IMG/VR virus record: IMGVR_UViG_3300035698_035310
Location: 248,001-312,000 of that record
DNA length: 64,000 nucleotides
Reading direction: 5' to 3' (one strand)
Positions within the stretch are counted from its first letter, which is position 1; each line of letters starts with the position of its first letter. This document shows positions 8,721 through 22,580 of the stretch, in pieces. Under the pieces are notes generated by a model. That model saw only the letters and a list, made by a program, of their open reading frames with translations, was not told the DNA's origin and searched no databases. The position numbers and the translations under genes are program-made.

Positions 8721-9167
8721 ATGATTACCGGAAGTCGCGCACGAATATTGGCAGAAACCACTTGGGGAACTGGTGGGACTCACTCTGCAAGAACCAATCG
8801 CAAAGGTGCATTCTATTATTCGTGTTCAGGACATGGTGGATACATCGTCGACGGTAATGCCCTAACCGTTGCGGAGCGTGATCACATAGACCGATTTAAA
8901 AAACCTGAATATGTATGGGCAATTATCAACGATGAAACCAGTGCGGTTCGTAAAACATCGAACCCGTTTTCAACTAAACGTTTCTTTGCCCATATGCGCG
9001 TAGGTGAAAGACTGGACAAAAACTATCCGATTTATTATTTTGAAGAAGATTGCGACTGGTCAATCCTTGAAAAGTTCACTGACATTCGCGCAGGTGGTAA
9101 GGATACCGACGCAGATACAATTCTCAATATATTCTATCGCTGGTGCCATGATCGCGAGGCGGCATAA
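8721..9167 (+). CDS. DUF7007-like protein
   Basis: SCSGHGG and FEEDCDW motifs. Confidence 0.55.
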   Translation: MITGSRARILAETTWGTGGTHSARTNRKGAFYYSCSGHGGYIVDGNALTVAERDHIDRFKKPEYVWAIINDETSAVRKTSNPFSTKRFFAHMRVGERLDKNYPIYYFEEDCDWSILEKFTDIRAGGKDTDADTILNIFYRWCHDREAA

Positions 9168-9221
9168 AGTGATCAAAGAGGTTACATTTATGTAACCTCT
9201 TTGACTAACTTAAAATAGTTC

Positions 9222-9276
9222 TTGCATTATCGATTGACTCGTGTATGATCATATCAGGGAGGGATCAGCGTTTTTT
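9222..9276 (+). ncRNA. promoter + AGGGAGGGATC unit, copy 4
   Basis: TTGCAT-N16-TATGAT, motif 9256-9267, T-run. Confidence 0.55.
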
Positions 9277-9417
9277 ATGGCGCAAGATTATTACAAAATT
9301 AAGTGAAACAAAGTAATAAAATAATGCATTATTCGGTTGACCATGTTACAGTTATTTGCTATATTTAAATTGTTCCAAGGCACTAACGCCTAACACAGAT
9401 TGAAAGGGAACCACAAA

Positions 9418-9894
9418 ATGTTAAACCGCAACCAAGTAAATGAGATTTTAGCCCCGCTTAACGGAAACACGTTTATCGGCTTAACCGCCACAACGATTCC
9501 AAAATTAACTGGCGGCAAGAAAAACGATATGCAGGGTGAAATCACCAAACGCACCGTTTCTGTTGTTCAGGTTTTCCAGAACAAATCCACGAACGGATAT
9601 GAAAACAAGCGCTTGAAAGCGAATCCAGACTTCAAATTGGGTGATCGCCCTTGGGGAACACGCGTTAAAGGAACACCGTTCATTGAACATAAAGGCGCGG
9701 ATTACATGGAAGTAATTTTCGTAAGCACCGATTCAGTTGATTATTTTCGCAATGGCGAACCAATCGAAAAAGATCAAATCGTTGGTTTGCCTGCCAGCCG
9801 CCCCGCTGGTGATACGGATAATGTAATTATTCGAACATATAAACTGGAAAGCATCGATTCACTTCGGGCGTTTGGGGCGGAATACACCGCCTAA
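9418..9894 (+). CDS. hypothetical phage protein
   Basis: GGKKN.MQG, R.WG.R..GTPFIEHKG..Y motifs; terminator 9910-9943. Confidence 0.75.
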   Translation: MLNRNQVNEILAPLNGNTFIGLTATTIPKLTGGKKNDMQGEITKRTVSVVQVFQNKSTNGYENKRLKANPDFKLGDRPWGTRVKGTPFIEHKGADYMEVIFVSTDSVDYFRNGEPIEKDQIVGLPASRPAGDTDNVIIRTYKLESIDSLRAFGAEYTA

Positions 9895-9953
9895 CCGATT
9901 CATACAAGGAAAAGAAAGTCAAGAGAAATCTTGACTTTCTTTTCGATTCATTT

Positions 9954-9968
9954 GTTCACGTTTTGTTC
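9954..9968. promoter_or_regulatory. alphaproteobacterial-type LexA box
   Basis: GTTC-acgtttt-GTTC (GTTC-N7-GTTC) at the -10 position of TTGACT 9931-9936. Confidence 0.45.
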
Positions 9969-9984
9969 TTATAAGATGATACCC

Positions 9985-10041
9985 AAAAAAAACTCATCCC
10001 TCCCTGATACAAAATTACCACGTTTACCCCATACGAGTCAA
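9985..10041 (-). ncRNA. promoter + AGGGAGGGATG unit, copy 5
   Basis: Motif 9994-10005, -35 at 10036-10041. Confidence 0.6.
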
Positions 10042-10057
10042 CACTTAATTTATTTTT

Positions 10058-10117
10058 ATTTAGGGGGTTGACTCATCTGATGCCTACCTTTATAACTACA
10101 AATAGAAACCAACCACA
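10058..10117 (+). repeat. 60-bp exact direct repeat (promoter cassette), second copy 10553-10612
   Basis: ATTTAGGGGGTTGACTCATCTGATGCCTACCTTTATAACTACAAATAGAAACCAACCACA occurs twice. Confidence 0.9.
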
Positions 10118-10132
10118 TAAGGAATTGCCCAC

Positions 10133-10435
10133 ATGAAAAACACTTACATAAACGCAGTATTCTTTAATGTATCTAACGAAAACGGTTTGGATACGTTTGC
10201 CGATAAGGTCCAGAAAGCATTGGATTGCGAATTGTTTTATTATGAAAATGGTAGGGAAATAGGCGTGGTTACGTGTGGCGGTTCCCCATCTGGCAAGGAT
10301 TACCAGTTTGGCATGGGTGGTGGCAACTTTGATTTGGATCATAACGTGGTGCTATATTCCGAACCCGCTACCGTGTTCGTTATGTTCGATGACGCTAGTG
10401 GTAGCAGGTGCGTTCAGCCAGTAAGCCACCGATAA
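10133..10435 (+). CDS. hypothetical protein
   Basis: Own promoter and SD. Confidence 0.7.
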   Translation: MKNTYINAVFFNVSNENGLDTFADKVQKALDCELFYYENGREIGVVTCGGSPSGKDYQFGMGGGNFDLDHNVVLYSEPATVFVMFDDASGSRCVQPVSHR

Positions 10436-10467
10436 GAAAAGAAATCGGCGCGGGGGCAAATTAGCCC

Positions 10468-10523
10468 TTGCGCCTTTTTTTGTTTCGTGGTATAAAATCC
10501 GTAGGGGGGGATGAGCCGATTTT
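10468..10523 (+). ncRNA. promoter + AGGGGGGGATG unit, copy 6 (variant)
   Basis: TTGCGC-N17-TATAAA, motif 10503-10514. Confidence 0.5.
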
Positions 10524-10630
10524 ATCATCAAAATTTATTTTAATAATAGTGCATTTAGGGGGTTGACTCATCTGATGCCTACCTTTATAACTACAAATAG
10601 AAACCAACCACAACCCCGAAGGAACTTATC

Positions 10631-11008
10631 ATGCAAAAAGTAATCGCCCACATCGAAGCAATCAACGCAGCAACCGGCAGCACTTGGGTTTTGAACGCGG
10701 ATCATTGGGCTGGCTACGAAATAACCACACCCGAAGCGTTTGATCGTTATGTGCTTACCACAAGCATTTGGGATGCATACAAATATGGCTTGGGCTTTAA
10801 GCCACACGGCATGATGATGGAAGCAATGAGCATGGAACAGTTGGAACGCGAACTGGAAAGCGTTCGCGCTTCAATCGATGCGAACGCCGAACACGAAGCC
10901 GAACGGGAACGGGTGAACAATTTCACTTGGCAAGAACATCTTGCTTGCGCCAACATGCCAGCAATGGCAAACGACTCCCCCTTCGCAGTGTTGCAGGGGG
11001 TGCGATAA
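10631..11008 (+). CDS. hypothetical phage protein
   Basis: HW..Y.ITT...F.RY....I.D.YK...G.KP motif. Confidence 0.7.
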   Translation: MQKVIAHIEAINAATGSTWVLNADHWAGYEITTPEAFDRYVLTTSIWDAYKYGLGFKPHGMMMEAMSMEQLERELESVRASIDANAEHEAERERVNNFTWQEHLACANMPAMANDSPFAVLQGVR

Positions 11009-11060
11009 CCAACCGAAAGGGGCGGGGGATTTTCCCCCGTTTTTTCGCGCCAGCAATTCC

Positions 11061-11117
11061 AAAAAAAAGACATCCCTCCCTATGGTGATATTAGCACTAT
11101 TGCCCAAACAGAGTCAA
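11061..11117 (-). ncRNA. promoter + AGGGAGGGATG unit, copy 7
   Basis: Motif 11070-11081, -35 at 11112-11117. Confidence 0.6.
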
Positions 11118-11271
11118 CACTTATTTTCGCCCCCAAATTTCAGGCATCACCCAATCTTACCACGTTTTCGAATTACAAGTCAACCCCCTATTTTAATTCA
11201 TTTAAGGGGTTGACTCTGTTTGGGTTGGGTAGTAATATCCCTTTATCAACTTAACAAAAGGAAACAAACAC

Positions 11272-11661
11272 ATGGATTCATTAAACGTTTTTGCGGATTC
11301 GAAAGTTGGCGATGGTGCAACGATCAATATGTATAGCGATTCAAAGGCTTGCACGATTGTGGCGATTAGTGATAAGCGTATCACGGTTCAATATGACGAT
11401 GTTAAATTGTTGAACGGTGCGAAATCTGGCGAACCCGATGCACTGGTTTTTGATGTAGGCGGATTTTCCGCACACTGTTCAGGTCGCCAGCGTTGGGAAA
11501 CAACACCAAACCCCGAAGGCGGCAAGGTGACTTATTCCCTGCGCAAGTGGAACGACTACAAAAATGAACCAGTTATGCGGTGGGCACCAGTTGGCAGCAA
11601 ACGCCACGAAGGTTCAGGCTTAACCGAAGGAAGGCATCACCACTACGATTTCAATTTCTAG
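11272..11661 (+). CDS. hypothetical phage protein
   Basis: VGDGAT...YSD..A.TI start and GR..HYDFNF end. Confidence 0.75.
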   Translation: MDSLNVFADSKVGDGATINMYSDSKACTIVAISDKRITVQYDDVKLLNGAKSGEPDALVFDVGGFSAHCSGRQRWETTPNPEGGKVTYSLRKWNDYKNEPVMRWAPVGSKRHEGSGLTEGRHHHYDFNF

Positions 11662-11724
11662 GCACAAGGAAAAAGGAGAGTCAAGAGAAATCTTGACTTT
11701 TCTTTTTTTATTTTTTCCGCCGCC

Positions 11725-11779
11725 AAAAAAAGGTCATCCCTCCCTACCACCATAATACACTATTCGAACAACGAGTCAA
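11725..11779 (-). ncRNA. promoter + AGGGAGGGATG unit, copy 8
   Basis: Motif 11734-11745, -35 at 11774-11779. Confidence 0.6.
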
Positions 11780-11785
11780 GACTAT

Positions 11786-11918
11786 AAACGGGGAACCACG
11801 AATGATTCCCCGTTTTCTTTTCTATAATGGCTTGGCTTGCCGTGTCGCCAGACGATTAGATCATGATGTCAAATCCTTCCGTTAATTTTTATCCGGTGTT
11901 TGAACTTACTCTCTACAC
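11786..11918 (-). ncRNA. candidate ~130-nt sRNA C
   Basis: TTGACA(11947-11942)-N16-TATTAT promoter, terminator 11786-11816, no ORF. Confidence 0.55.
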
Positions 11919-12020
11919 CATAATACATTAAACAAAATAGATGTCAACACTTATTTTAGGGGTTGACACTAACAATCGAAACCGCTATAACTGTATCAAC
12001 TTAACCAAAAGGAACACCCA

Positions 12021-12230
12021 ATGTCAAACCAAGCATTTGTAGTTTATAACGGCAAAATCACAGTCAAGACTGAGATTTACGACGGCGGTTTATATTTCGC
12101 CGACACCGTGAAAGAAGTGACACAACGCTTGCGCGATTGCGAGACGTTGGTTGTTAAATCTGGCAGTGAACGCGACCTTAAGAAAATCGTCACCGTCGCC
12201 GACCTTTTCACAAACAATCCCCAAGGATAA
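12021..12230 (+). CDS. hypothetical protein
   Basis: Own promoter and SD. Confidence 0.65.
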   Translation: MSNQAFVVYNGKITVKTEIYDGGLYFADTVKEVTQRLRDCETLVVKSGSERDLKKIVTVADLFTNNPQG

Positions 12231-12234
12231 GACA

Positions 12235-12729
12235 ATGTCAAATCCCAAACACATAAACGATTTTTGCAAAGAACTTCGCGCACTTATGGAAAAGCACGGA
12301 ATTGATTCATTAGGTGTCGAAATTGAGGGCGACACACACGGCATAAGTGAACAATTCGTTATCGATGATAATCAAAATAAAACACACGTGATCGACGGAT
12401 TTTCAAGTTATTTGGATAAATCAGATTTGCGTGATTATATCGAAGTAACCAGCGAATTATTGAAACGCGACGACGTTCAATTTGTTATCAACGATTTGCA
12501 AGATGATGGAGAAGAAAGTTCCGCTAAACTTTTTGAAGACTATATCATCAAAGCGGAAAACAACGGCTTAAACATCGACCAAGCATTCCAAGGCACTATC
12601 GCACTAAGGGAAGCAATGAATATTATGGGAAGTTATTTCGACGCCCTGAATACTAATAATCTTGTTTTTGTTAATCAAATCAATGCGATTGATTCAGCAA
12701 TGCTACATTATAAAGATAGTTTAAAATAA
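12235..12729 (+). CDS. hypothetical protein
   Basis: Start reassigned to the ATG after AAGGA. Confidence 0.7.
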   Translation: MSNPKHINDFCKELRALMEKHGIDSLGVEIEGDTHGISEQFVIDDNQNKTHVIDGFSSYLDKSDLRDYIEVTSELLKRDDVQFVINDLQDDGEESSAKLFEDYIIKAENNGLNIDQAFQGTIALREAMNIMGSYFDALNTNNLVFVNQINAIDSAMLHYKDSLK

Positions 12730-12790
12730 CCGTTGACACTGGTACATGAAACCGATATAACTGTATCAACTTAACCAAAAGGATCATATC

Positions 12791-13150
12791 ATGGAAACAA
12801 TATCGCGGTTTTATGCGCACGCTGGCAAAATTGCCATAACGATTGGCGCGGGTGATACTACATATATCACCACAGACCAAGCCGAAATGATCGGCGCTAA
12901 ATTATCTGAACTTGCCAGTCAAGTGAAAAACGGCAATCATTCGACTACGGTTGAAGTTCCCGCAACTGAAGAACAAATGAAACGGATGCGTGAGGATGCG
13001 CCCGAAATTTATAAAATCATTCGTTGTTATCGCAATGGCAATAGCCCCCGCACAATTGCACGTAGTGTAACGATTTTCGAAGCGCAAGAACATTGTAGCG
13101 ATCCATCAACCTCAAACACCAAATATTTTGATGGATATGAGTTGAAATAG
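12791..13150 (+). CDS. hypothetical phage protein
   Basis: C-terminal YKIIR.Y...EAQ.HC.DP.T...FDGY motif. Confidence 0.7.
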   Translation: METISRFYAHAGKIAITIGAGDTTYITTDQAEMIGAKLSELASQVKNGNHSTTVEVPATEEQMKRMREDAPEIYKIIRCYRNGNSPRTIARSVTIFEAQEHCSDPSTSNTKYFDGYELK

Positions 13151-13210
13151 GTCTTGACTCTGGTGTAGTTAGTTCGTATATTAACTACACCAGAACAAAG
13201 GAACAAACAA

Positions 13211-13351
13211 ATGTCAAACGCTGAAATGTATCTCGATTGGGTTAACAATTTTTTAACTGTTGCACGGTTCGCCGAATATTACAATATCTCCGAGACCGAA
13301 GCTCTTGCCGTGATCGAAAAAGGTCGCATCGACCACCACGCAAATCTGTAA
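13211..13351 (+). CDS. 46-aa small phage protein
   Basis: Below track cutoff; MYLDWVNNFLTVARFAEYY; own promoter and SD. Confidence 0.7.
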   Translation: MSNAEMYLDWVNNFLTVARFAEYYNISETEALAVIEKGRIDHHANL

Positions 13352-13369
13352 ACAACGAAAGACAAACCC

Positions 13370-13669
13370 ATGCAAGTCACAACCGAACAACTCGAAACTT
13401 TCCTAACTAAAGCGCAAGCACATGTAAACGCTGATTACAGCACTAACTTTGAAGGCGATGCGCCAACACTTTCGATTGACCCAATGACCGAACGATCTAA
13501 GTACGCCAAAATCGTGAAAGATACCGGTCAACGTTCATTGTGGGGTTTCGTTGAACTATCAACCGGCAATCTGTTGACAGGCAGTTGGAAAGCACCACGC
13601 AAATCAAAATCAACATGCGGTCATATTGACGAGCCATTCTTACCACGGACTCGCTGGATGAGTGTATAA
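13370..13669 (+). CDS. hypothetical phage protein
   Basis: Y.KIV....S.WGFV....G.L....WKAP motif. Confidence 0.7.
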   Translation: MQVTTEQLETFLTKAQAHVNADYSTNFEGDAPTLSIDPMTERSKYAKIVKDTGQRSLWGFVELSTGNLLTGSWKAPRKSKSTCGHIDEPFLPRTRWMSV

Positions 13670-13735
13670 TAAACCCTTGACTCTGATTCAGTTATTCTTT
13701 ATAACTGAATAATCAGAACAACGAAAGAAAATCCA

Positions 13736-13912
13736 ATGGTAGGCAAACTTAATTTTCGTGTATTCCAAGATGGCAAACAACACATTGTTTCCGCACGTAG
13801 CATCGTGGTTCGTTTTGAACAAGGTGCATTCATATCAGCTAACATAAGACAAGATAGTGCCGAATATCTTGAAGCATGTGAAGCAATGGTTAAACATGAT
13901 ATGGGCGAATGA
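13736..13912 (+). CDS. 58-aa hypothetical protein
   Basis: Below track cutoff; follows promoter at 13677. Confidence 0.55.
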   Translation: MVGKLNFRVFQDGKQHIVSARSIVVRFEQGAFISANIRQDSAEYLEACEAMVKHDMGE

Positions 13913-13913
13913 T

Positions 13914-14093
13914 ATGACTGAAATTGCACAAGGCACTGAAGTCAAATTAAAATTCATTAACGGCGAAAATCGTTATGGCGCACTTATGGATAATCGAAAA
14001 AAACATTTGATTTATCGCCCCGTTGATGGTATCAATACCATTGTTTTTCATAAAGACTTGAAAAGTGTTGCACCCGTATATATTCCATCTTAA
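13914..14093 (+). CDS. small hypothetical protein
   Basis: ORF following the previous stop. Confidence 0.55.
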   Translation: MTEIAQGTEVKLKFINGENRYGALMDNRKKHLIYRPVDGINTIVFHKDLKSVAPVYIPS

Positions 14094-14122
14094 TAAAAAC
14101 AACAGCCGGAGTCACTTAGGTG

Positions 14123-14176
14123 TTGACTCCGGCATTTTTCCTGCTAATATACTATCAGGGAGGGATGAGTAAAATT
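14123..14176 (+). ncRNA. promoter + AGGGAGGGATG unit, copy 9
   Basis: -35 embedded in terminator hairpin GCCGGAGTCA..TGACTCCGGC; motif 14157-14168. Confidence 0.55.
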
Positions 14177-14284
14177 CGCCCCGAAAAAAACTTTCATTTT
14201 ATTTCATTTAAGGGGTTGACTCTGATCGGGTTGGGTAGTAATATCACTACATCAAAACAAACCAACAACCCAAGGAACAAAACC

Positions 14285-14869
14285 ATGGCAACCGATAAAA
14301 ATGGCTTAACACTTTCAAACGCTTCTGATTCTGGTTATAAATTTGTAACTACTTTGTTTGAAGGACCGCTGGCTGGAAAGTTCGTCGCCTTCGCGGATGT
14401 TAAAACCGCCGAATTGCAACGCCTGAACAAATCTCACGCGCACGGAATAAACGGTTTCTTTGGATTCAAAAACGTTGTTCCGTTGGGCGTTTTCGATGAT
14501 GTGCGCGACGCCGCATACGTTGGACAAACATTCCACGCAGGGAACGCAGATGACCGCGACGACAACCTTGCCGAATTATACGCTGGCAATGAGTCAGTTA
14601 TCCCTAAATCATTGACCGATTGGGATAATCCCGCCGATGTTACTTCAATGAAAAAAGCCGCAACCCGCGCAAAAACCCGACGCATGGGTAAAACATTCGA
14701 TGCAAAAAAAGCCGAGACCGCAATCGATAAGTTTGCCAACAATTTCAAATCATACAAAATCGGTAACATGGATGTCCGCGTAATCTTGGAACGCATGAAA
14801 GAACTGTTTGATAACGGAACAAGCTTAACCCTTTCCGCCGAAACCGTTTGCTCCGATTACCAGCGATAA
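14285..14869 (+). CDS. hypothetical early protein
   Basis: Start reassigned to the ATG after AAGGA; LG.FDD.RDAAY motif loosely AP2-like. Confidence 0.7.
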   Translation: MATDKNGLTLSNASDSGYKFVTTLFEGPLAGKFVAFADVKTAELQRLNKSHAHGINGFFGFKNVVPLGVFDDVRDAAYVGQTFHAGNADDRDDNLAELYAGNESVIPKSLTDWDNPADVTSMKKAATRAKTRRMGKTFDAKKAETAIDKFANNFKSYKIGNMDVRVILERMKELFDNGTSLTLSAETVCSDYQR

Positions 14870-14930
14870 CCCTTGACTCTGGTGTAATTGATAAGTATAA
14901 TTGATTACACCAGAACAAAAGGAATTTAAC

Positions 14931-15203
14931 ATGGATAAACGCGATGTGATTGTAATTTGCGTTGGCAGTGCCGCCGATGATATACGCGCACTTAATCACG
15001 CAACAAACTCCGCAGTTCTAGTCGTTGAAGATAAACCCGCAATTCACGAAATGGCATTGATGGATGATATATTTTTAACCGATGAAGCAAAAGATATGTT
15101 TGTGCTTGAATTAATCGAAGACGCGTTGCCAAAGAATTTTCTAAGTGAACCAAAACCCCGAAAGGCTTGGAAAAACGAATTCGAAAATCTAGGTCGTAAA
15201 TAA
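14931..15203 (+). CDS. hypothetical protein
   Basis: Own promoter and SD. Confidence 0.65.
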   Translation: MDKRDVIVICVGSAADDIRALNHATNSAVLVVEDKPAIHEMALMDDIFLTDEAKDMFVLELIEDALPKNFLSEPKPRKAWKNEFENLGRK

Positions 15204-15227
15204 ATCAAAACCAGAGTCACTTAGGTG

Positions 15228-15282
15228 TTGACTCTGGATTTCTTTCTGCTATTATACTGTCAGGGAGGGATGACTTTATTTT
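15228..15282 (+). ncRNA. promoter + AGGGAGGGATG unit, copy 10
   Basis: -35 embedded in hairpin CCAGAGTCA..TGACTCTGG; motif 15262-15273. Confidence 0.6.
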
Positions 15283-15297
15283 ATTCCCGCACTTATA

Positions 15298-15398
15298 ATA
15301 AAAGCCAGACTCGCGTCTGACCTTTATCCTTTCTTTCTATCCGGTTTATGTCCGCCACGTCGGGTCGGAACTATGTATCGCCGAACGCGTCGGCTAGA
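15298..15398 (-). ncRNA. candidate ~100-nt sRNA D
   Basis: TTGACA(15431-15426)-N16-TATTAT promoter, GC-rich hairpins, terminator GGTCAGACgcgaGTCTGGCTTTT. Confidence 0.55.
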
Positions 15399-15512
15399 TT
15401 TATATAATACCACAACAACCAAACATGTCAACAAAAAAGATTCAATAATAACACTTGACTCCGTTTGGGTTGGGTGTATACTATCCATAGATTGAAACAA
15501 AGGATTAATCAA

Positions 15513-16433
15513 ATGGCAAAAGCAACCCGCACCAAAATCGATCATGAGCAACAAATCACTAACGCTATTGTCGCCCACGTTGAAGGGTATATCGCCGCCG
15601 AGGCTACAGGCGAAGAGATCGCACGTTGGGAAAGCCCCTTCGGAAAATTCTTCCGTGAAGGCCATTTTTGCGCCGCAACCGATAACCAGTATAAAGGCTG
15701 GACTAACAATTTTTTCCTTACACTTATGGCGCACGCAAGCGGATTCAATTCCGATGCATGGGGAACATTCAAGCAATGGAAAAGCATGGGAACGGATGAA
15801 ACACCCGTATCTGTTAAGCATGGTCAAAAAGGTTCCGCTTGGATTGCTTTTCCATATATCAACAAAGATAAAGTAACCGGCGACGACACCGTAACCGGAT
15901 TCGGATATCGCGCCGTATTCAATGCCGATCAAATCGAAGGATATACGCCCGAGGTTGTTGAACTACCAGAGTCGCAGGTTGTGCAACATGCCAAAGCTGA
16001 AACATTCTTGAAAAATCTGGACGTAACATTCCAGCATATCGGAAACCGCGCTTTCTATAGCCCTGCTAGTGATGCAATCAGCATGCCCCCAGAAGGCGCG
16101 TTTAAGGCGACTGAATACAGTACCGCAACCGAAGGCTACTATGGCACCAAGTTTCATGAATACGCCCACGCAACCCTGCACGCTAGCCGGTGCAATCGCG
16201 AACAAGGCGCGGATAAAGCTTCATACGCTTTCGAAGAGTTGGTCGCCGAATTGACCTCGACTATCCTATGTTCGCGCTTTGGTATATCCGCACAACCACG
16301 CGAAGACCACGCTAAGTATATACATTCATGGTTGAAAGCACTGAAAAGCGACAAGACCATGATTATGAAGGCAATGAAGAAAGCAAGCCAAGCAATCGCT
16401 TGGATGGATAAAAAGCAACCAACATCAAAATAA
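15513..16433 (+). CDS. ardC: ArdC-like antirestriction protein (ssDNA-binding domain + zincin-like metallopeptidase)
   Basis: Y.G.N, W.TFKQW....V..G.KG, VFN.DQ.EG, AFYSP..D.I.MP, HEYAH.T, YAFEELVAEL, YI.SWLK.L. Confidence 0.85.
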   Translation: MAKATRTKIDHEQQITNAIVAHVEGYIAAEATGEEIARWESPFGKFFREGHFCAATDNQYKGWTNNFFLTLMAHASGFNSDAWGTFKQWKSMGTDETPVSVKHGQKGSAWIAFPYINKDKVTGDDTVTGFGYRAVFNADQIEGYTPEVVELPESQVVQHAKAETFLKNLDVTFQHIGNRAFYSPASDAISMPPEGAFKATEYSTATEGYYGTKFHEYAHATLHASRCNREQGADKASYAFEELVAELTSTILCSRFGISAQPREDHAKYIHSWLKALKSDKTMIMKAMKKASQAIAWMDKKQPTSK

Positions 16434-16494
16434 AAGGTTGACAGTAAGGATATGATATCGTATTATATCCTTACTGAAACGAAAGGAACACACA

Positions 16495-16596
16495 ATGACA
16501 CACGGTAACGGCAAGATCAGGCGATTCGCAGGCAATCTAGGGGCGCTAATGCTGGCAGCGCTGGCAGGCTACGCGACGCTGGTGGTCCTAGCATAA
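16495..16596 (+). CDS. 33-aa hydrophobic peptide
   Basis: Own stem-loop promoter and AAGGA SD; last gene of the early block. Confidence 0.55.
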   Translation: MTHGNGKIRRFAGNLGALMLAALAGYATLVVLA

Positions 16597-16799
16597 CGCC
16601 AGAACCGAGTCAAGCACTTATTTCACGGTGTTGCACTTATGACACAGTCAAGTCTTTTATTATAAAATAAAAATAAAAAAAGACTTGACATTCGAAAAAA
16701 AGAGTGCTCGTGCAGTGTTTTGAAGTTTTTTATTTAATGGATACCTTACCCTTAGCTCGAAATACGCCAAAATTTTTCAGGCTAAATCGGAACTCTGGC

Positions 16800-16894
16800 T
16801 ATCGTGACACTTATCGTGACAAAATGTCGCGATACCATTATAATGGGTCATTTATTCATCCTATCGTGACATTTGACCCATTATAATGGGTCAA
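16800..16894. repeat. iteron/palindrome cluster
   Basis: TATCGTGACA x3 plus inverted TGTCGCGATA; perfect 22-bp palindrome TTGACCCATTATAATGGGTCAA plus a partial second copy. Confidence 0.8.
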
Positions 16895-17004
16895 TACACC
16901 CCCCACCCCCTTTTCTATGAAACACTTATTCATTCAATATAAAAAAAATTCTGCGCCAAAATTTTAATAAATAATATTAGGTTTTTAACATAGGAACATT
17001 TAAC

Positions 17005-17160
17005 ATGAAAACATTATCCGATAAACAACATGCTACCATTAAAGAGAACATGCGTGCTATTCCAAAAGCATCATATACAGACATTGATCGCACCGCAGTT
17101 CTTAAAGAAGAATATGCTGAATTTATAAAAAATATCAACGAAAGCGACAAACCAGAATAA
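17005..17160 (+). CDS. 51-aa hypothetical protein
   Basis: AGGA SD; downstream of an ATAAATA late-promoter-like motif. Confidence 0.6.
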   Translation: MKTLSDKQHATIKENMRAIPKASYTDIDRTAVLKEEYAEFIKNINESDKPE

Positions 17161-17163
17161 ACA

Positions 17164-17595
17164 ATGAGAGCATCCGACTTCATCGCTGAAACACTTATAT
17201 CTGTTTCGCACGGAACCAATACCGATTTTGATCAATTAGATGTGGCAAAAACATCCGATGGTGGAATTCACTTTGGTTCCAATCAACAAGCAGCGTTACG
17301 ATCAACTGGAAAAAATTCGCGCATCATCGATACACAAATTGATGTTAGAAAACCAAAACGTTGCAAAGACGATGGATCAGGATGGAAAAACAAAATAAAA
17401 TCCGCCAAACGTTCTGGATATGACAGTATTGTATATTTGAACCGTTATGAAAATATGACCACTGAACGAGTAGAACAGTTATCACAATCCGGCAAACTAG
17501 ATACTTTGGATTCATTATCCGATGCCGCATTCAAAAAATTAGTTCCTGAAGCACAAGACAGTTATATTGTGTTCGACAACGATCAAATAAAATAG
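17164..17595 (+). CDS. ART-PolyVal-like (ADP-ribosyltransferase fold) protein
   Basis: HGT...F, GIHFG...A, GYDSIVY.N..E, SYIVFD..QIK. Confidence 0.6.
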   Translation: MRASDFIAETLISVSHGTNTDFDQLDVAKTSDGGIHFGSNQQAALRSTGKNSRIIDTQIDVRKPKRCKDDGSGWKNKIKSAKRSGYDSIVYLNRYENMTTERVEQLSQSGKLDTLDSLSDAAFKKLVPEAQDSYIVFDNDQIK

Positions 17596-17605
17596 GACAC
17601 TTATC

Positions 17606-17992
17606 ATGAGAGCATCCGAAATCACAGAAACAACAACGTCTTTAAAATGGGCAACCCGCAACCCATCACCAAAAGATTATGAAATAGTTATGATCGACAT
17701 TAAAGCACTTATGGATAATACCAATCGCATACAAAAAATTTCATTATCTGCTGTAACCAAAGCAGACGATGAAAACATTATAGGTGATCGCGTTTCAAGA
17801 GCAAAACAATTTTGGCTAGATGGTGGCGAAATGCGACTATCAATGGTTGGATACAGTGATTATTCCAAGATGGTAGACTTCACCGACGGTAGACACCGCC
17901 TAATAGCCGCGTATCAACTTGGTGAACGCCATGCACCCGTATTGGCAGACAAGGACGGCATAGAAGAATTTAAAGCGCTGGTAGGGGCTTAA
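17606..17992 (+). CDS. ParB/Srx-like N-terminal domain protein
   Basis: DGRHRL.AA..LG....PV. Confidence 0.6.
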   Translation: MRASEITETTTSLKWATRNPSPKDYEIVMIDIKALMDNTNRIQKISLSAVTKADDENIIGDRVSRAKQFWLDGGEMRLSMVGYSDYSKMVDFTDGRHRLIAAYQLGERHAPVLADKDGIEEFKALVGA

Positions 17993-18067
17993 AACCCATC
18001 ACCCCCAAACTATATTGACACCGTAAAACCACAATGATATACTTATTCTTTAATAAAAGGAAATAAT

Positions 18068-18178
18068 ATGATAAAAGGCAATGACGACAATTTCAGTAGC
18101 GATACAGGCAATACCATCGAATGGGGTTTGATCGTTATTTTACTATTAGGATTTCTTATAATTCCCCTGTTCGGGTAA
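18068..18178 (+). CDS. 36-aa membrane peptide
   Basis: Promoter, AAGGA SD, hydrophobic C-terminus. Confidence 0.55.
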   Translation: MIKGNDDNFSSDTGNTIEWGLIVILLLGFLIIPLFG

Positions 18179-18274
18179 TTAATCATTTGTTAGATTATAC
18201 CAGTAACGACATATTTGGAATACTTATTGTTATTGTGTGTATAGTCCTTATTATATTTGGCCCCATATATATTT

Positions 18275-18505
18275 TTATGTAGTACCCACAATATTTACAT
18301 TATGCTGCGTGCTAGGAAAATTCAATAGATCATATTGTGTTATATTATGATTAGCAAATGACATATCATGTGGAAATTTTATTGTTGTATACATTATTGA
18401 TCCATTAATATTTGCTGTTATATCATGATACCGTTCACGCGATGGTGATTTATCAATGTTTATTACTGTAAACATCAAAATATTGTTAGTATCGCAGCAG
18501 TGCAT
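18275..18505 (-). CDS. small paralog family A member
   Basis: C-terminal ITQYDLL...ST..NVNI motif; start uncertain. Confidence 0.5.
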   Translation of the reverse strand: MHCCDTNNILMFTVINIDKSPSRERYHDITANINGSIMYTTIKFPHDMSFANHNITQYDLLNFPSTQHNVNIVGTT

Positions 18506-18539
18506 ATTAACAATACGGCTAATATATCATCATTAAACC

Positions 18540-18764
18540 TCACGATATAGTTACATTATTAACTGTGCCATAATACATCAATAATGATTGTTGTGTTATG
18601 CTATTATCATTGATAAATTCATTTAACGGATAAGCCAACGCTACTCGCATAGCCCTCATTTTACCGTCAACAAATGCTTTTTCCACAAAGTCATATTTAA
18701 TTTCATATTTATGATGTAGTTTAGGTTTAGTTTTTGTTTTCGTAATATCTATTATGTTTATCAT
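18540..18764 (-). CDS. small paralog family A member
   Basis: C-terminal ITQQSLL...GT.NNVTI. Confidence 0.55.
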   Translation of the reverse strand: MINIIDITKTKTKPKLHHKYEIKYDFVEKAFVDGKMRAMRVALAYPLNEFINDNSITQQSLLMYYGTVNNVTIS

Positions 18765-18949
18765 TTTAATTCACTTATTTCCACACGTTTTTTTGTACTG
18801 ATTATTGACAGTAAATCACGTTGTGATAATGTCATATTATGAACAATGGATACTACGCTATATTTCATAGTCACATCCATAATTATACCATCCTTCCAAT
18901 ATACAATATAATGCATACGATTGAAAACAATATCTGTTCCATTTCTCAT
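18761..18949 (-). CDS. small paralog family A member
   Basis: C-terminal LSQRDLL...ST.KRVEI. Confidence 0.55.
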   Translation of the reverse strand: MRNGTDIVFNRMHYIVYWKDGIIMDVTMKYSVVSIVHNMTLSQRDLLSIISTKKRVEISELK

Positions 18950-19139
18950 TTATTGGTTGCCCCCAAACAGTATTGCATTATGGTTACATTATTTTTAGTA
19001 TCGTATAACGGTAGGAGATCACATTCATAATATCATAATGCAAAAAGCAAAGAATACGTTGACTACCACCAATGATTCAGTATCCATTATACGACAGCCA
19101 ATATTATAAAAATCATAAAAATCCAATCATCATCATCCA

Positions 19140-19349
19140 TTATTCAAATCCTTTTATTACGGTACAAGTCATTTTGTTACCTGGGTATCGTTCAGTATCC
19201 CACGATTCTTCTGGTTGGGAGAATGTATATTCACCGTGATTAACGCAGTCATCATAAATGGATGACGTTGTCATTGTATAAGTGAGCGAAAATGTAAGTA
19301 CTGCTACGCAAGCAAGCAAACATCATAGTAACTTTGTATCATTATTCAT
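19140..19349 (-). pseudogene. paralog family B member with in-frame TGA at codon 9
   Basis: MNNDTKLL*CLLACVAV...IYDDCVNHGEYTF...MTCTVI; TGA at 19325-19323. Confidence 0.55.
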
Positions 19350-19548
19350 TTTCAATTACCTTACATCTAATTGTTTTACCGAAATATTGGTGTGATGAGT
19401 ATGCTGTATCAAATGTTGAGAATTTGTATGTCCCGTTGGTATTGCAATGGTTATATATGGTACCAATTGTGCTATAATAAGTGATACTCACCGTGGTAAG
19501 TCCTAATATTAATATTATCACACTTATAGCAATTGTATTAAAGATCAT
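19342..19548 (-). CDS. small membrane protein, paralog family B
   Basis: TM + IY..C...G.Y.F...I.C.VI. Confidence 0.65.
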   Translation of the reverse strand: MIFNTIAISVIILILGLTTVSITYYSTIGTIYNHCNTNGTYKFSTFDTAYSSHQYFGKTIRCKVIENE

Positions 19549-19739
19549 TTATCGATACTCCTTATTTGGCAATCCATTATTCTATCATCGAAAGGACGTG
19601 TGTCAATAGCATTACGTGAAATGAATTCATGATTGCCATATGTTGCACAATTTTCAAACACAGCGGTCAATGCGACTGAATAGGAAACATATGATGTAAT
19701 CAAAATTGTAACGATTGCTGGTAGCACCATATCTCTCAT
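19545..19739 (-). CDS. small membrane protein, paralog family B
   Basis: TM + VF..C...G.H.F...M.C.I. Confidence 0.65.
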   Translation of the reverse strand: MRDMVLPAIVTILITSYVSYSVALTAVFENCATYGNHEFISRNAIDTRPFDDRIMDCQIRSIDK

Positions 19740-20308
19740 TGTTTTTTCTCCTTTTCGAATTGTTTGACTTCATCAAGAAATTTTCTAATATCTTTATTTC
19801 CACCACCGAATATACCAAGCTCTATCATTTCTTGTCGTTTTCTAAGGTAATCAAAATCACAATTACCATCATATAATCCAGAACCGGTTTGCATAGACCA
19901 AAACCGATACATCATGGCTCTTGATGTGTAATGTGGTCCATGGTGGTATGATTGTTTTTCAACATCCCAACTACAATCATCTATTAGTTTAAATGCTAAC
20001 TGCACGTATGCGATAGCAGGGTCTGATAGCCAATCTCTTACATTGGTATCGAAGTAACCGGGATCACGGTTCCATTCACGGTCAGCCATTTCGGTAGCCC
20101 TACGTATTTCTTTTAGGTAGTCGGGTGGTATGGCATATTTAAGTTGTGTTATCATATCGAGGTATGGTTTAGGGAGCGCTGTTTTACCATTTTGCAATTT
20201 GTCATTATTCGACCAAGCTAAGTGATATATGACTACATCATCGGTTTTTTGGGCACCATCGATCAAAGTAGGAAAGACGAGATTAATATCTTTGGTATTA
20301 AACAGCAT
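19736..20308 (-). CDS. hypothetical protein
   Basis: Start reassigned to the ATG overlapping the upstream gene end. Confidence 0.65.
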   Translation of the reverse strand: MLFNTKDINLVFPTLIDGAQKTDDVVIYHLAWSNNDKLQNGKTALPKPYLDMITQLKYAIPPDYLKEIRRATEMADREWNRDPGYFDTNVRDWLSDPAIAYVQLAFKLIDDCSWDVEKQSYHHGPHYTSRAMMYRFWSMQTGSGLYDGNCDFDYLRKRQEMIELGIFGGGNKDIRKFLDEVKQFEKEKKQ

Positions 20309-20483
20309 CTTTGATATCGATATCATTTTCAAAATATTTAACTGAGGACATAACGACAACTTGATTATATGATTCACGTTTCATTATTAATTCGTCGCGA
20401 TTATGGCTGATATAAGTGCCACTTAGGTATGATCTGCTATTTGTTTCTCTAAAGTACACTTTTATTTTATCACCGTTTTTCAT
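20298..20483 (-). CDS. putative Sm/Hfq-like fold protein
   Basis: IKVYF......LSG...S.....LIMK.....QVV....V pattern. Confidence 0.4.
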   Translation of the reverse strand: MKNGDKIKVYFRETNSRSYLSGTYISHNRDELIMKRESYNQVVVMSSVKYFENDIDIKDAV

Positions 20484-20710
20484 TATATTTCCTCTATGAG
20501 TAATATTTTATCTAGTGGGATGAATGCTCGAAGGGGTTGATCATTTACACCAACGATATTGTTTATATCACGATGTATGATAAGACTATCTTCAGAATAT
20601 GAATAAAATTCACCTATTGTAGTTGATTTATCGGTACTGTAACGGACATCGATAAACACTTTTATTCTAGTGCCTACCATTAATTGTCTTAATGTATGAG
20701 TGTCGATCAT
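20483..20710 (-). CDS. putative Sm/LSm-like fold protein
   Basis: L.VG.RIKV...IGEFYSY....LII...FIP...I..IE pattern; AGGAG SD. Confidence 0.4.
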   Translation of the reverse strand: MIDTHTLRQLMVGTRIKVFIDVRYSTDKSTTIGEFYSYSEDSLIIHRDINNIVGVNDQPLRAFIPLDKILLIEEI

Positions 20711-21167
20711 TTATATCTCCTATGTTTTTTATAGTATATAGGATAATTGATCATTGTCAAGGGAATAGTGGATTACGGTTTTGGGCGGACTGATTTTACA
20801 TTGTGGGGAAATTATGGTTCACTTATCGGGTTTATAAGTGAAAAGGTTTCCACAGTAGAAGCATGCGGTTACGTTTCTTTTATGAAGGGGGATTGTATAG
20901 TATACGATGGGGTGATTATGCGGGGGATTTGGTCCTGCGCACTTAACATTTGGTGTATTTGTGTAGATTATTTTGGGATTATGTGTCATAAGTGTATTTA
21001 TTATGGGGTATTATGGGGTATAAGCGCTCAAAAAATTTGCTTAAAGCCTACGGCTTTTTATGATTTCGTTGTTTAATTGTTGAAGGGCGGCGGCGTAAAA
21101 CACCGATTGTTACTGTTGATCTATTGTGTCATTACTAAATAACATCGTATTTAACAGGAGAAGTAGT

Positions 21168-21383
21168 ATGAATAACAAATTAGGATTGATGGTATTTTAT
21201 ATACATGTTGGAACGTTACCAATGCATAGATCGATGTCATATATAGAGTCGATAAAAAAACAAATAATGGATGGTAAGAAAGAAACGCAGTTAACAAGGA
21301 ATTATGATACCATGTTTATTCCGTCGTCTGATCCAGATAATCGAGATACTGTAATAGAGATGTTTCCATACGAGAATGTATAA
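21168..21383 (+). CDS. hypothetical phage protein
   Basis: VFYI.VG.LP.....YI..IK motif; AGGAG SD; CTAAATA upstream. Confidence 0.65.
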   Translation: MNNKLGLMVFYIHVGTLPMHRSMSYIESIKKQIMDGKKETQLTRNYDTMFIPSSDPDNRDTVIEMFPYENV

Positions 21384-21435
21384 ATATATATATAATAATA
21401 AATAACATTAGACTTTACTTATCGGAGATATAACA

Positions 21436-22197
21436 ATGTCACAGAATGCAACAAACATGCGAAAATTAATGGAAAGCGTTAATCCAGTGCAACATATGGA
21501 AATGAGCGATATTCCTGTTGATAACATGGGCGCAATTGATAACAATGGCGACATGGACGCACAAGTAGGCGGCGACATGGCTCCTGATATGGGAATGGAC
21601 GCTGCTCCTGAAGCACCAGCACCAGATATGGGCATGGAAATGCCTGATATGGGAATGGATATGGCAGCACCTGAAGGCGCAAGCAGTGACATCATTGATG
21701 CACTTGACGGCGAATTCAAGCGTTTGACAACTGAATTCTTGCAAACCGGTGGTGAACTGGATGAAGCGGGACTTGGTGATGTTCGTGAAAAACTAGGTAA
21801 GCATATGACAAGTATTCTTGATGTATTGCATTCTGGTTGGATGGATAACATGATGGATCAAGGCGCTAACGAAGAAGCACCATCTTTTGGTGGTGATTCT
21901 GACGGCGACGCACCTGATTTCAGTGGTGGCGATAGTGATGATTCCGATGATTCTTCTTCAGATGACGACTCTGGTGATTCCGATGATAAAGCACCTAACT
22001 TTGGTGGTGATGATTCTGATGATTCCGGCGACGATGAAGAAAAAGATTCTGATGACTCTGATGATGATAAATCTGATGACGACGATGGTGACAAAGAAGA
22101 TAAAGAAGTTGACGAAAGCGAAAATCCTCTTAAGAATGCACACATCAATGAATCAACAAAAATGCGCAATTTACAAAATATCATACTAAACGGTTAA
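21436..22197 (+). CDS. very acidic low-complexity protein (scaffold/internal-head-like)
   Basis: PDMGM repeats, D/S-rich tract, MRKLMES motif; TATAAATA late promoter at ~21379; terminator 22224-22253. Confidence 0.75.
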   Translation: MSQNATNMRKLMESVNPVQHMEMSDIPVDNMGAIDNNGDMDAQVGGDMAPDMGMDAAPEAPAPDMGMEMPDMGMDMAAPEGASSDIIDALDGEFKRLTTEFLQTGGELDEAGLGDVREKLGKHMTSILDVLHSGWMDNMMDQGANEEAPSFGGDSDGDAPDFSGGDSDDSDDSSSDDDSGDSDDKAPNFGGDDSDDSGDDEEKDSDDSDDDKSDDDDGDKEDKEVDESENPLKNAHINESTKMRNLQNIILNG

Positions 22198-22271
22198 TAC
22201 ACTATGATTAAAGAATTATAGAAACCCTACCATTAATTTGGTGGGGTTTTTTTTAATTACTAAATAAATCC

Positions 22272-22580
22272 ATGCTTTCAAAGAATGATATCAAACATCA
22301 CATAGCGTTAAATGAAATGGGAATGTATTCTACATTAGAACATGTAGCTCCTGGAGCACTTAGTTTTATTGATTCTGTGATAATGATGATGAACTCACAG
22401 GGTTGGTATGACTTAGCGTGGTGTCTATCAGAAGATGTTAAGCGTGGGGTTTATCCACCGCGCAAAGATTCGATACATCGCACCCTAACTTATAAGTATC
22501 TCAAAATCAATAAACCTTTATCTAATATGGATAAAATGATATTGACTTTAAAGAATCTATATAATACAATATCACGATAA
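22272..22580 (+). CDS. hypothetical protein
   Basis: ORF after CTAAATA. Confidence 0.55.
   Translation: MLSKNDIKHHIALNEMGMYSTLEHVAPGALSFIDSVIMMMNSQGWYDLAWCLSEDVKRGVYPPRKDSIHRTLTYKYLKINKPLSNMDKMILTLKNLYNTISR

What the first reader, a model, noticed from the sequence alone, without database searches (positions are those of the whole stretch)
11786..15431. Two stand-alone minus-strand sRNAs (C 11786-11918, D 15298-15398) share ACCGGAUA...AAGGAU
SEEN: each has its own TTGACA-N16-TATTAT promoter and an intrinsic terminator, and neither has a credible ORF. C contains ACCGGATAaaaattaacggAAGGAT and D contains ACCGGATAgaaagaAAGGAT in A-rich, probably single-stranded context. Each is adjacent to an AGGGAGGGATG unit (C in tandem with copy 8, D convergent with copy 10). 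INFERENCE: a second class of decoy or regulatory sRNA organised into non-coding islands.
Basis: partly seen in the sequence, partly recalled or inferred. Interest (0 to 1): 0.6.

Follow-up and report, generated by a model that had tools for sequence, protein, structure and literature searches.

The report
Two unrelated candidate phage small RNAs
Two short leftward promoter-to-terminator cassettes without genes sit between operons in the early region of an uncultivated giant phage and are plausible small RNA genes, but the motif said to unite them is no more than chance would give, and neither expression nor conservation could be tested.

Summary
C and D each have a near-consensus sigma-70 promoter (TTGACA-N16-TATTAT, 11 of 12). 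Each has a hairpin terminator about 100-130 nt downstream and no credible ORF. Each lies beside an AGGGAGGGATG unit.

The grouping into one class fails. Sharing an 8-mer plus a nearby 6-mer has P = 0.06-0.11. AAGGAT is this phage's ordinary ribosome-binding motif, and in D it belongs to the A-tract of a two-way terminator. The motifs sit at different places in the two RNAs and are partly base-paired. Without their terminators, both RNAs fold no better than shuffled sequence.

- No Rfam family matches, and there are no paralogues or targets in the phage genome.
- No relative with readable DNA exists. The best DNA polymerase match is about 50% identical. The one closer relative has no DNA on hand.

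Best reading: two independent early non-coding transcripts, each the leftward arm of a back-to-back divergent promoter pair. AGGGAGGGATG units fill that position elsewhere. D resembles lambda OOP, overlapping unit 10 by about 35 nt at the 3' ends. C carries a two-codon mini-ORF with a well-spaced ribosome-binding site. Interest is modest.

The parts
11920..11947 (-). Promoter of C: TTGACA, 16-nt spacer, TATTAT; A/T-rich stretch upstream
   Evidence: 11/12; one of only two minus-strand sites of 11/12 or better in 9000-19000.
11783..11913 (-). Predicted C transcript, about 130 nt (start about 11913, end in the U-tract)
   Evidence: Sequence and fold. Start and end are predicted, not measured.
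11873..11897 (-). Motif ACCGGATA (11890-11897) ... AAGGAT (11873-11878) in C
   Evidence: Unpaired probability 0.57 and 0.38.
11856..11864 (-). Mini-ORF ATG ATC TAA, 9 nt after the AAGGA ribosome-binding motif
   Evidence: Such an arrangement occurs in 0.18% of random 98-nt genome segments and 1.1% of shuffles of C.
11786..11815 (-). Terminator hairpin of C (core 11789-11812, UUCG loop), followed by UUUAUAG
   Evidence: dG -15.1 on minus against -11.0 on plus; tail score 3.10 on minus against 4.53 on plus.
11679..11779 (-). AGGGAGGGATG unit 'copy 8': promoter 11779..11752, motif 11735-11745, terminator 11698..11679. Lies in tandem downstream of C.
11963..11991 (+). Rightward operon promoter (TTGACA-17-TATAAC), back to back with the C promoter; 15 bp between the two -35 hexamers
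15404..15431 (-). Promoter of D: TTGACA, 16-nt spacer, TG-extended TATTAT
15293..15399 (-). Predicted D transcript, about 105 nt: G+C-rich 5' part (64% GC), A-rich linker, terminator
   Evidence: Start and end are predicted, not measured.
15326..15345 (-). Motif ACCGGATA (15338-15345) ... AAGGAT (15326-15331) in D. The AAGGAT lies in the A-tract that pairs with the terminator U-tail.
15304..15322 (.). Two-way terminator hairpin shared by D (-) and unit copy 10 (+). The minus-strand U-tract is 15295-15303.
   Evidence: dG -9.5 on minus against -6.1 on plus; predicted 3' overlap of the convergent RNAs about 35 nt.
15228..15272 (+). AGGGAGGGATG unit 'copy 10': promoter 15228-15255, motif 15262-15272. 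Converges on D.
15209..15237 (.). Second two-way hairpin. Any D read-through would end here after crossing unit 10 in antisense.
   Evidence: Read from the sequence; inference.
15455..16433 (+). Rightward promoter (15455-15482), back to back with the D promoter (23 bp between -35 hexamers), and the ArdC-like anti-restriction gene (15513-16433)
15341..15359 (-). 19 nt of D that are an exact antisense match to ispH codons (PVYVRHE) of many Alphaproteobacteria
   Evidence: The flanks do not match. A lead only.

Best explanation
C and D are two independent, unrelated short early transcripts made by the host sigma-70 RNA polymerase, and most likely non-coding. Each is the leftward arm of a back-to-back divergent promoter pair at the head of a rightward early operon. 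In at least four other islands of this phage an AGGGAGGGATG unit holds that same position.

D (about 105 nt) runs into a two-way terminator that it shares with the convergent unit 10. The two RNAs therefore have about 35 nt of complementary 3' ends. D most likely acts in cis as an OOP-like antisense partner of that unit, or of read-through from the upstream operon.

C (about 130 nt) ends at its own hairpin just before the promoter of unit 8. It either shields that promoter or reads partly into the unit. Its one unusual internal feature is a two-codon mini-ORF behind a well-spaced ribosome-binding motif.

Shown: the promoter, terminator and ORF anatomy and the island geometry. Inferred: that the promoters fire, where the RNAs begin and end, and every step of function.
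For: - Near-consensus promoters, the only two of that quality on the minus strand in 10 kb.
- Hairpins at 100-130 nt that are stronger on the minus strand through G.U pairs. C's hairpin has no plus-strand transcript that needs it.
- No ORF.
- Gaps of 15 and 23 bp between the -35 hexamers of the paired promoters, the same geometry as units at genome 227479, 240292 and 252372.
- The C-D similarity is at chance level.
- Mini-ORF chance is 0.2-1%.
- The OOP precedent: a leftward RNA with its own promoter and terminator that overlaps 52 nt of cII (PMC5869508).
Against: - No expression data.
- No relative with readable DNA, so no conservation or covariation test.
- The RNA bodies fold like shuffles.
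- Orphan 11/12 promoter-like sites occur at about the chance rate genome-wide.
- D's hairpin is needed anyway to end unit 10.
- The 3' overlap is a by-product of any shared two-way terminator.
- Islands whose unit lies on the plus strand mostly lack a leftward promoter, so the divergent arm is not a universal requirement.
Confidence: 0.5

Rival explanations
1. One reading: C and D form one class of trans-acting decoy or regulatory sRNA whose function lies in the shared, single-stranded ACCGGAUA...AAGGAU element.
For: With one substitution allowed in the 8-mer, the composite motif occurs only in C and D in 359 kb, on the same strand. The most permissive alignment gives p = 0.02. Both motifs lie in A-rich sequence.
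Against: The proper test gives P = 0.056-0.11 and BLAST gives E = 0.12. A reversed control pattern also hits once. AAGGAT is the phage's standard ribosome-binding motif. The motif lies near the 5' end in C but directly before the terminator in D. It is partly paired. No complementary phage target exceeds shuffles. It is absent from relatives and from viral contigs.
Confidence: 0.1
2. The RNA sequences do not matter. The cassettes are decayed small gene cassettes that have lost their ORF. Alternatively, only leftward transcription itself is used, for example for supercoiling or RNA polymerase competition at the neighbouring rightward promoter, or to insulate operons.
For: The bodies are unstructured. 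There are no paralogues or relatives. The back-to-back geometry, with -35 hexamers 14-25 bp apart, is shared with several units. Antisense transcription in bacteria is pervasive and rarely conserved (PMC3419515).
Against: The hairpins are tuned to the minus strand. The promoters are stronger than their rightward partners. The mini-ORF in C is unlikely by chance. Most islands with a plus-strand unit manage without a leftward promoter.
Confidence: 0.25
3. C is a lambda-bar-like minigene. Strong early expression of AUG-AUC-stop behind a ribosome-binding motif drives peptidyl-tRNA drop-off and ties up ribosomes or tRNA-Ile. It would form one theme with the neighbouring short-ORF AGGGAGGGATG units.
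For: AAGGA, 9 nt, then ATG ATC TAA, with a chance of 0.18-1.1%. The shorter the minigene, the more drop-off occurs (PMC2490762). The units next door carry ORFs of mostly 4-29 codons. The phage encodes two tRNA-Ile(GAU) genes.
Against: This is a post hoc feature in one sequence. D has no start codon after its ribosome-binding motif. The GGAU of that motif in C is predicted to be paired. The record holds no phage peptidyl-tRNA hydrolase that would protect the phage's own translation.
Confidence: 0.08
4. D is a trans-antisense RNA against host ispH mRNA in an alphaproteobacterial host.
For: A 19-nt perfect antisense match to ispH codons PVYVRHE is found in about 84 species. Part of the match lies in D's single-stranded linker. 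The best-matching characterised phages for the DNA polymerase infect Rhizobiales.
Against: Any 18-mer is expected about 17 times in 596 Gb. The flanks show no similarity. In 301 genomes there were 23 hits at E <= 0.05 against about 15 expected, and D's nt 3-23 gave as many hits as the ispH site. The host is unknown. C shows nothing comparable.
Confidence: 0.03
5. D is an RNA anti-CRISPR (a solitary CRISPR-repeat mimic) placed in an anti-defence locus next to the ArdC-like gene.
For: From memory, a small hairpin followed by AUAAACCG recalls the type I-E repeat and its 5' handle. An anti-restriction gene lies next door.
Against: No CRISPR repeat family of Rfam matches, even at E <= 10 on 121 nt. 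The 18-mer spanning the hairpin arm and handle occurs only as single copies in 185,579 species genomes, never in an array.
Confidence: 0.02

Closest known systems
Phage lambda OOP RNA (pO-oop-tO)
   Same: A short leftward RNA with its own sigma-70 promoter and its own hairpin terminator, set against the main rightward transcription, whose 3' part overlaps the 3' end of a convergent transcript (PMC5869508: 52 nt overlap with cII). D matches this layout, with about 35 nt of overlap with unit 10.
   Different: There is no sequence similarity. D's partner is a tiny AGGGAGGGATG unit rather than a regulator gene. The overlap is only the shared terminator. The phage is not known to be temperate. RNase III cleavage is untested. 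C overlaps nothing unless it reads through.
Hfq-type trans-acting sRNAs of Proteobacteria (general architecture)
   Same: Own promoter, about 100-130 nt, no ORF, an A-rich single-stranded stretch, and a Rho-independent terminator with a U-tail.
   Different: No conserved seed, no target found, no homologue in Rfam, host unknown. C's U-tail is short.
Lambda bar minigenes and other toxic two-codon minigenes
   Same: C carries a ribosome-binding motif, AUG, one sense codon (Ile) and a stop. Short minigenes cause peptidyl-tRNA drop-off (PMC2490762).
   Different: The resemblance rests on 9 nt plus spacing. No functional data exist. D has no such ORF.
Small non-coding and antisense RNAs seen in transcriptomes of virulent phages (e.g. 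PAK_P3, PMC4933390; ONT-cappable-seq of Pseudomonas phages, PMC10914365)
   Same: Short early or antisense RNAs from host-type promoters in lytic phage genomes, mostly of unknown function.
   Different: Those were observed as RNA. C and D are predictions from DNA in an uncultivated phage.

Membership tests
Any Rfam 15 family (including CRISPR repeat, tRNA, 6S and known phage sRNA families) | Covariance-model score at or above the family's gathering threshold | tested here: not met
   No match in the whole window at gathering thresholds. Only noise at E <= 10 on 11600-15500 and on each unit alone. ARAGORN finds no tRNA or tmRNA in the window.
One sRNA family containing both C and D | Sequence similarity between C and D beyond chance | tested here: not met
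   BLAST best hit 11/12, E = 0.12. Composite motif P = 0.056-0.11. Local alignment p = 0.02-0.3 depending on gap costs.
One sRNA family containing both C and D | Common architecture, with the motif at equivalent positions and a shared fold | tested here: not met
   The motif starts at nt 17 of C but at nt 55 of D, directly before the terminator. The bodies have no significant fold.
Stand-alone bacterial or phage sRNA gene (generic) | Own promoter, own intrinsic terminator, no translated ORF | tested here: met
   By prediction only.
Stand-alone bacterial or phage sRNA gene (generic) | A discrete transcript detected | not testable with these tools
Stand-alone bacterial or phage sRNA gene (generic) | Conservation or covariation in relatives | not testable with these tools
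   Nearest DNA polymerase is 45-50% identical. The only closer relative (ArdC 72%) has no DNA on hand. The second assembly is 100% identical.
OOP-type cis-antisense RNA | Convergent with, and overlapping, the 3' end of another transcript | tested here: met
   Met for D: a shared two-way hairpin at 15304-15322 and about 35 nt of predicted overlap with unit 10. Not met for C.
OOP-type cis-antisense RNA | Duplex-dependent processing or repression of the partner | not testable with these tools
   Needs RNA work in infected cells.
bar-type minigene | Ribosome-binding motif at working distance, AUG, 1-3 sense codons, stop | tested here: met
   Met for C only: AAGGA, 9 nt, ATG ATC TAA at 11864..11856. 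D has none.
bar-type minigene | Translation with peptidyl-tRNA drop-off or toxicity | not testable with these tools
   Experimental. No phage peptidyl-tRNA hydrolase gene was found.
CsrA/RsmA sponge RNA | Several GGA motifs presented in hairpin loops or single strands | tested here: inconclusive
   There are 3-4 GGA per RNA, against roughly 1 expected by my own estimate. None lies in a predicted hairpin loop and several are paired. The phage record has no CsrA gene. The host is unknown.
RNA anti-CRISPR (solitary repeat unit) | Near-identity to a CRISPR repeat present in arrays of a host | tested here: not met
   No Rfam CRISPR repeat hit. The 18-mer occurs only singly in species genomes, mostly inside ispH. 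Only one 18-mer was scanned.

The most novel reading that the evidence does not exclude
C and D, together with the 15 AGGGAGGGATG units, form one battery of about 17 very short, strongly promoted early transcription units in a roughly 570-kb phage. The battery would act on the host's translation or RNA metabolism. C would be a two-codon minigene. D would be an antisense RNA, against unit 10 or, through its 19-nt perfect match, against host ispH mRNA.
Probability: 0.08. Interest if true: 0.75.

Novelty: new member of a known kind. Interest (0 to 1): 0.3.

Why it matters
Small RNAs of virulent phages, and especially of giant uncultivated ones, are barely charted. Two stand-alone early RNAs in a host-takeover region beside an anti-restriction gene would be useful entry points if they are real.

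As it stands the value is mostly corrective. The feature that made the pair look like a new class, the shared motif, does not survive a chance test. What remains is an ordinary-looking prediction that needs RNA data.

The more unusual object in this region is the surrounding architecture: back-to-back promoters, terminator-promoter hairpins and the AGGGAGGGATG short-ORF units. C and D are better read as parts of that architecture than as a separate class.

Tried and rejected
- **Rfam and tRNA searches.** Gathering and permissive modes gave nothing. ARAGORN found no tRNA or tmRNA in the window.
- **DNA similarity to known phages.** None, in near or distant mode.
- **Relatives through the ArdC-like protein.**
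  - Viral contigs gave 40% identity or less.
  - Metagenome contigs gave only the phage's own contig at 100%, then 42% or less.
  - The large protein collection gave one relative at 72%, but its four ENA contigs have no DNA on hand.
  - The relatives at about 60% lie in unrelated, G+C-richer contexts with no C- or D-like sequence.
- **Relatives through the DNA polymerase.** At most 50% identity.
- **Motifs in relatives.** The C/D motif and AGGGAGGGATG are absent from five large relatives and from viral contigs.
- **Second assembly of the same phage.** 100% identical, so it gives no variation to read constraint from.
- **Paralogues in the genome.** None.
- **Phage mRNA targets.** Duplex energies against 267 translation start regions are no better than for shuffled sRNAs.
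- **Promoter class.** N16-TATTAT is not specific to the units, C and D. It also drives 11 protein genes.
- **Replication origin or R-loop primer.** There is no GC-skew turning point near C or D.
- **Phage-encoded partners.** No CsrA, Hfq, ProQ, peptidyl-tRNA hydrolase or IspH/LytB gene in the record.
- **CRISPR-repeat mimic.** No array was found. The 18-mer hit ispH instead.
- **ispH as a host target.** Kept only as a lead.
- **C as a decayed AGGGAGGGATG unit.** Only 6 of 11 bases after the -10 agree, by reading, so this is not pursued.
- **The 202-codon minus-strand ORF at 15324-15932.** It lies antisense to the ArdC-like gene, starts upstream of D's promoter and has no Pfam match. I treat it as a shadow frame.


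Full report
**Setting.** The window is bases 248001-312000 of a 359,044-bp IMG/VR virus record with 36% G+C.
- The same DNA lies on a 570,750-bp JGI contig.
- It also lies, 100% identical over 12.9 kb, on an independent 570,549-bp ENA contig with a different end point.
- The DNA polymerase is at most 45% identical to those of known jumbo phages: Sinorhizobium phage Phosso, Agrobacterium phage Atu_ph07 and the Rak2-like group. It is at most 50% identical to anything in IMG/VR. This is an orphan lineage.
- C and D lie in an early-looking block (genome 211-265 kb, G+C 0.39-0.42). The block holds small rightward genes, each group with a sigma-70-type promoter and an AAAGGA-type ribosome-binding motif.
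- D sits next to an ArdC-like anti-restriction gene.

**Observation: what holds.**
- Both promoters are as described: TTGACA, 16 nt, TATTAT, scoring 11 of 12, with D also carrying an extended -10 TG.
- In 9000-19000 they are the only minus-strand sites of that quality. The region has six such sites on both strands, against 0.84 +/- 0.93 in shuffles.
- Each promoter is followed at about 100-130 nt by a hairpin.
  - C: 10 bp, UUCG loop, dG -15.1, then UUUAUAG (tail score 3.10).
  - D: 7 bp, GCGA loop, dG -9.5, then UUUUAUUAU (tail score 3.97).
- Both hairpins contain G.U pairs, so they are stronger on the minus strand than on the plus strand: -15.1 against -11.0, and -9.5 against -6.1. I take this as the best internal sign that minus-strand RNA really runs through them.
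- C's hairpin has no plus-strand transcript that would need it.
- Neither unit has an ORF of 12 or more codons with a ribosome-binding motif. The gene caller behind the ENA assembly left both islands empty.
- The adjacency to AGGGAGGGATG units is as stated.

**Observation: what does not hold.**
- The motif strings exist, but sharing them is not remarkable.
  - 20% of dinucleotide-shuffled pairs share some 8-mer.
  - 5.6% also share a 6-mer within 30 nt. For random pairs of genome segments that figure is 11%.
  - BLAST gives E = 0.12 for the best C-D match.
  - Local alignments give p between 0.02 and 0.3, depending on gap costs.
  - ACCGGATA occurs 11 times in the genome, against about 8 expected from base composition by my own estimate.
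- AAGGAT is simply the phage's usual ribosome-binding motif.
- In D, AAGGAT is part of the A-tract that mirrors the plus-strand terminator's T-tract and pairs with D's own U-tail.
- The motif starts at nt 17 of C but at nt 55 of D.
- Predicted unpaired probabilities average 0.38-0.67, with CCG and GGAU (C) and GAU (D) paired.
- The folding z-score of -3 for each full RNA comes entirely from the terminators. The bodies give z = -0.09 and +0.07.
- A caution on the promoters: genome-wide there are 31 minus-strand sites of 11/12 or better. Of these, 18 head ORFs and 13 are orphans, and about 15 orphans would be expected by chance. The case for C and D therefore rests on the combination of features, not on the promoter match alone.

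**What they are.**
- No Rfam family, tRNA or tmRNA matches.
- There are no paralogues in the genome.
- No complementarity to 267 phage translation start regions exceeds that of shuffled controls.
- The most informative result is positional. The leftward promoters of C and D stand back to back with the rightward promoters of the next operon, with 15 and 23 bp between the -35 hexamers.
- That is the same geometry as the leftward AGGGAGGGATG units at genome 227479 (14 bp), 240292 (23 bp), 252372 (20 bp) and 257995 (about 25 bp).
- C and D therefore occupy a slot that elsewhere holds such a unit.
- The N16-TATTAT promoter form is not special to them. It occurs 19 times, against 0.8 expected, and 11 of those head protein genes.

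**Mechanism.** For D, the layout is that of lambda OOP: a short leftward RNA with its own promoter and terminator, overlapping the 3' end of a convergent RNA (PMC5869508).
- D and unit 10 share the hairpin at 15304-15322 and would have about 35 complementary nucleotides.
- Read-through of D would cross the whole unit in antisense and stop at the next two-way hairpin, 15209-15237 (read).

For C, the only feature that stands out statistically is AAGGA, 9 nt, ATG ATC TAA.
- This is found in 0.18% of random genome segments and 1.1% of shuffles of C.
- It recalls two-codon minigenes (PMC2490762) and the short ORFs of the neighbouring units. It was noticed after the fact, and D has no counterpart.

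A plainer alternative is that only the act of leftward transcription matters, or that these are small gene cassettes that lost their ORF. Antisense transcription that is real but unconserved is common in bacteria (PMC3419515).

**Leads that stayed leads.**
- A remembered likeness of D's hairpin-plus-AUAAACCG to type I-E CRISPR repeats led me to scan one 18-mer against 185,579 species genomes. There were no arrays.
- Instead, about 84 of the 91 hits were the antisense strand of ispH (codons PVYVRHE) in Alphaproteobacteria. Including one more base, the match is 19 nt.
- The flanks do not match, the phage record has no ispH gene, and any 18-mer is expected about 17 times in that collection.
- In 301 sampled alphaproteobacterial genomes D gave 23 hits at E <= 0.05, against about 15 expected. 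Seven were at the ispH site and seven at nt 3-23. C gave 10 hits, scattered.
- I rate this at about 3%.
- No CsrA, Hfq, ProQ or peptidyl-tRNA hydrolase gene occurs in the phage record.

**What could not be done.**
- The only relative close enough to be useful (ArdC 72%, ENA ERZ24794642-47) has no DNA on hand. Its gene map shows similar gene-free gaps of 150-260 nt, but their content is unknown.

**Verdict.**
- The anatomy is real, and I put the chance of discrete leftward transcripts at about 0.7.
- The 'class' defined by ACCGGAUA...AAGGAU is not supported.
- This is a new, unverified member of a known kind: phage small or antisense RNAs.
- Interest is 0.3.

Noticed in passing
whole record; window 9513-22433 = L275: Two independent assemblies of about 570.6 kb (JGI Ga0222634_1000003 and ENA ERZ27315719 k141_202852) carry this region, with different end points. 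Four of the five contigs that hold the ArdC-like protein are 0.2-1 Mb. The replicon is probably a circularly permuted phage genome of about 570 kb, and the 359-kb 'provirus' record looks like a trimming artefact.
   Followed up: partly
window 2098(+), 3474(-), 4372(-), 9995(-), 11071(-), 11735(-), 14157(+), 15262(+); seven more at genome 211-240 kb: The AGGGAGGGATG units start transcription at about the first A. After the ATG they carry conserved codons for Ser/Thr-Phe-Phe-Trp, with synonymous Ser codons AGT, AGC and TCT. The ORFs then vary, mostly 4-29 codons. This looks like selection on a short peptide start as much as on an RNA decoy. The units are absent from five jumbo relatives and from viral contigs.
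   Followed up: partly
window 14107-14135 and 15209-15237: Plus-strand terminator hairpins whose descending arm is the -35 hexamer (TTGACT) of the next promoter, so terminator and promoter are fused. Several terminators in the region are built on AGTCAA...TTGACT.
   Followed up: no
window 16795-16895: In the 570-nt gene-free gap after the ArdC-like gene, TATCGTGACA occurs three times and CCATTATAATGGGTCA twice. The pattern looks like operators or iterons around a promoter.
   Followed up: no
genome 28369-28446 and 221822-221895 (outside the window): ARAGORN finds 32 tRNA genes. Two of them have a CUA anticodon, like amber suppressors. Two are tRNA-Ile(GAU).
   Followed up: no
window 11962-12013 and 12732-12783: Two near-identical (89%) copies of a promoter plus 5' leader, heading the genes at 12021 and 12791.
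   Followed up: no
window 15341-15359 (-): 19 nt of D are an exact antisense match to ispH codons PVYVRHE of about 84 alphaproteobacterial species, with no flank similarity.
   Followed up: partly
window 17164-17595 (+): An ADP-ribosyltransferase domain of the 'polyvalent protein' type (ART-PolyVal) lies just downstream of the ArdC-like (MPTase-PolyVal) gene, so this end of the early block looks like an anti-defence cluster.
   Followed up: no
genome 228986-231367 (outside the window): A 2.4-kb stretch without called ORFs holds three strong rightward promoters (229532, 230156, 231037). It may hold further non-coding RNAs.
   Followed up: no
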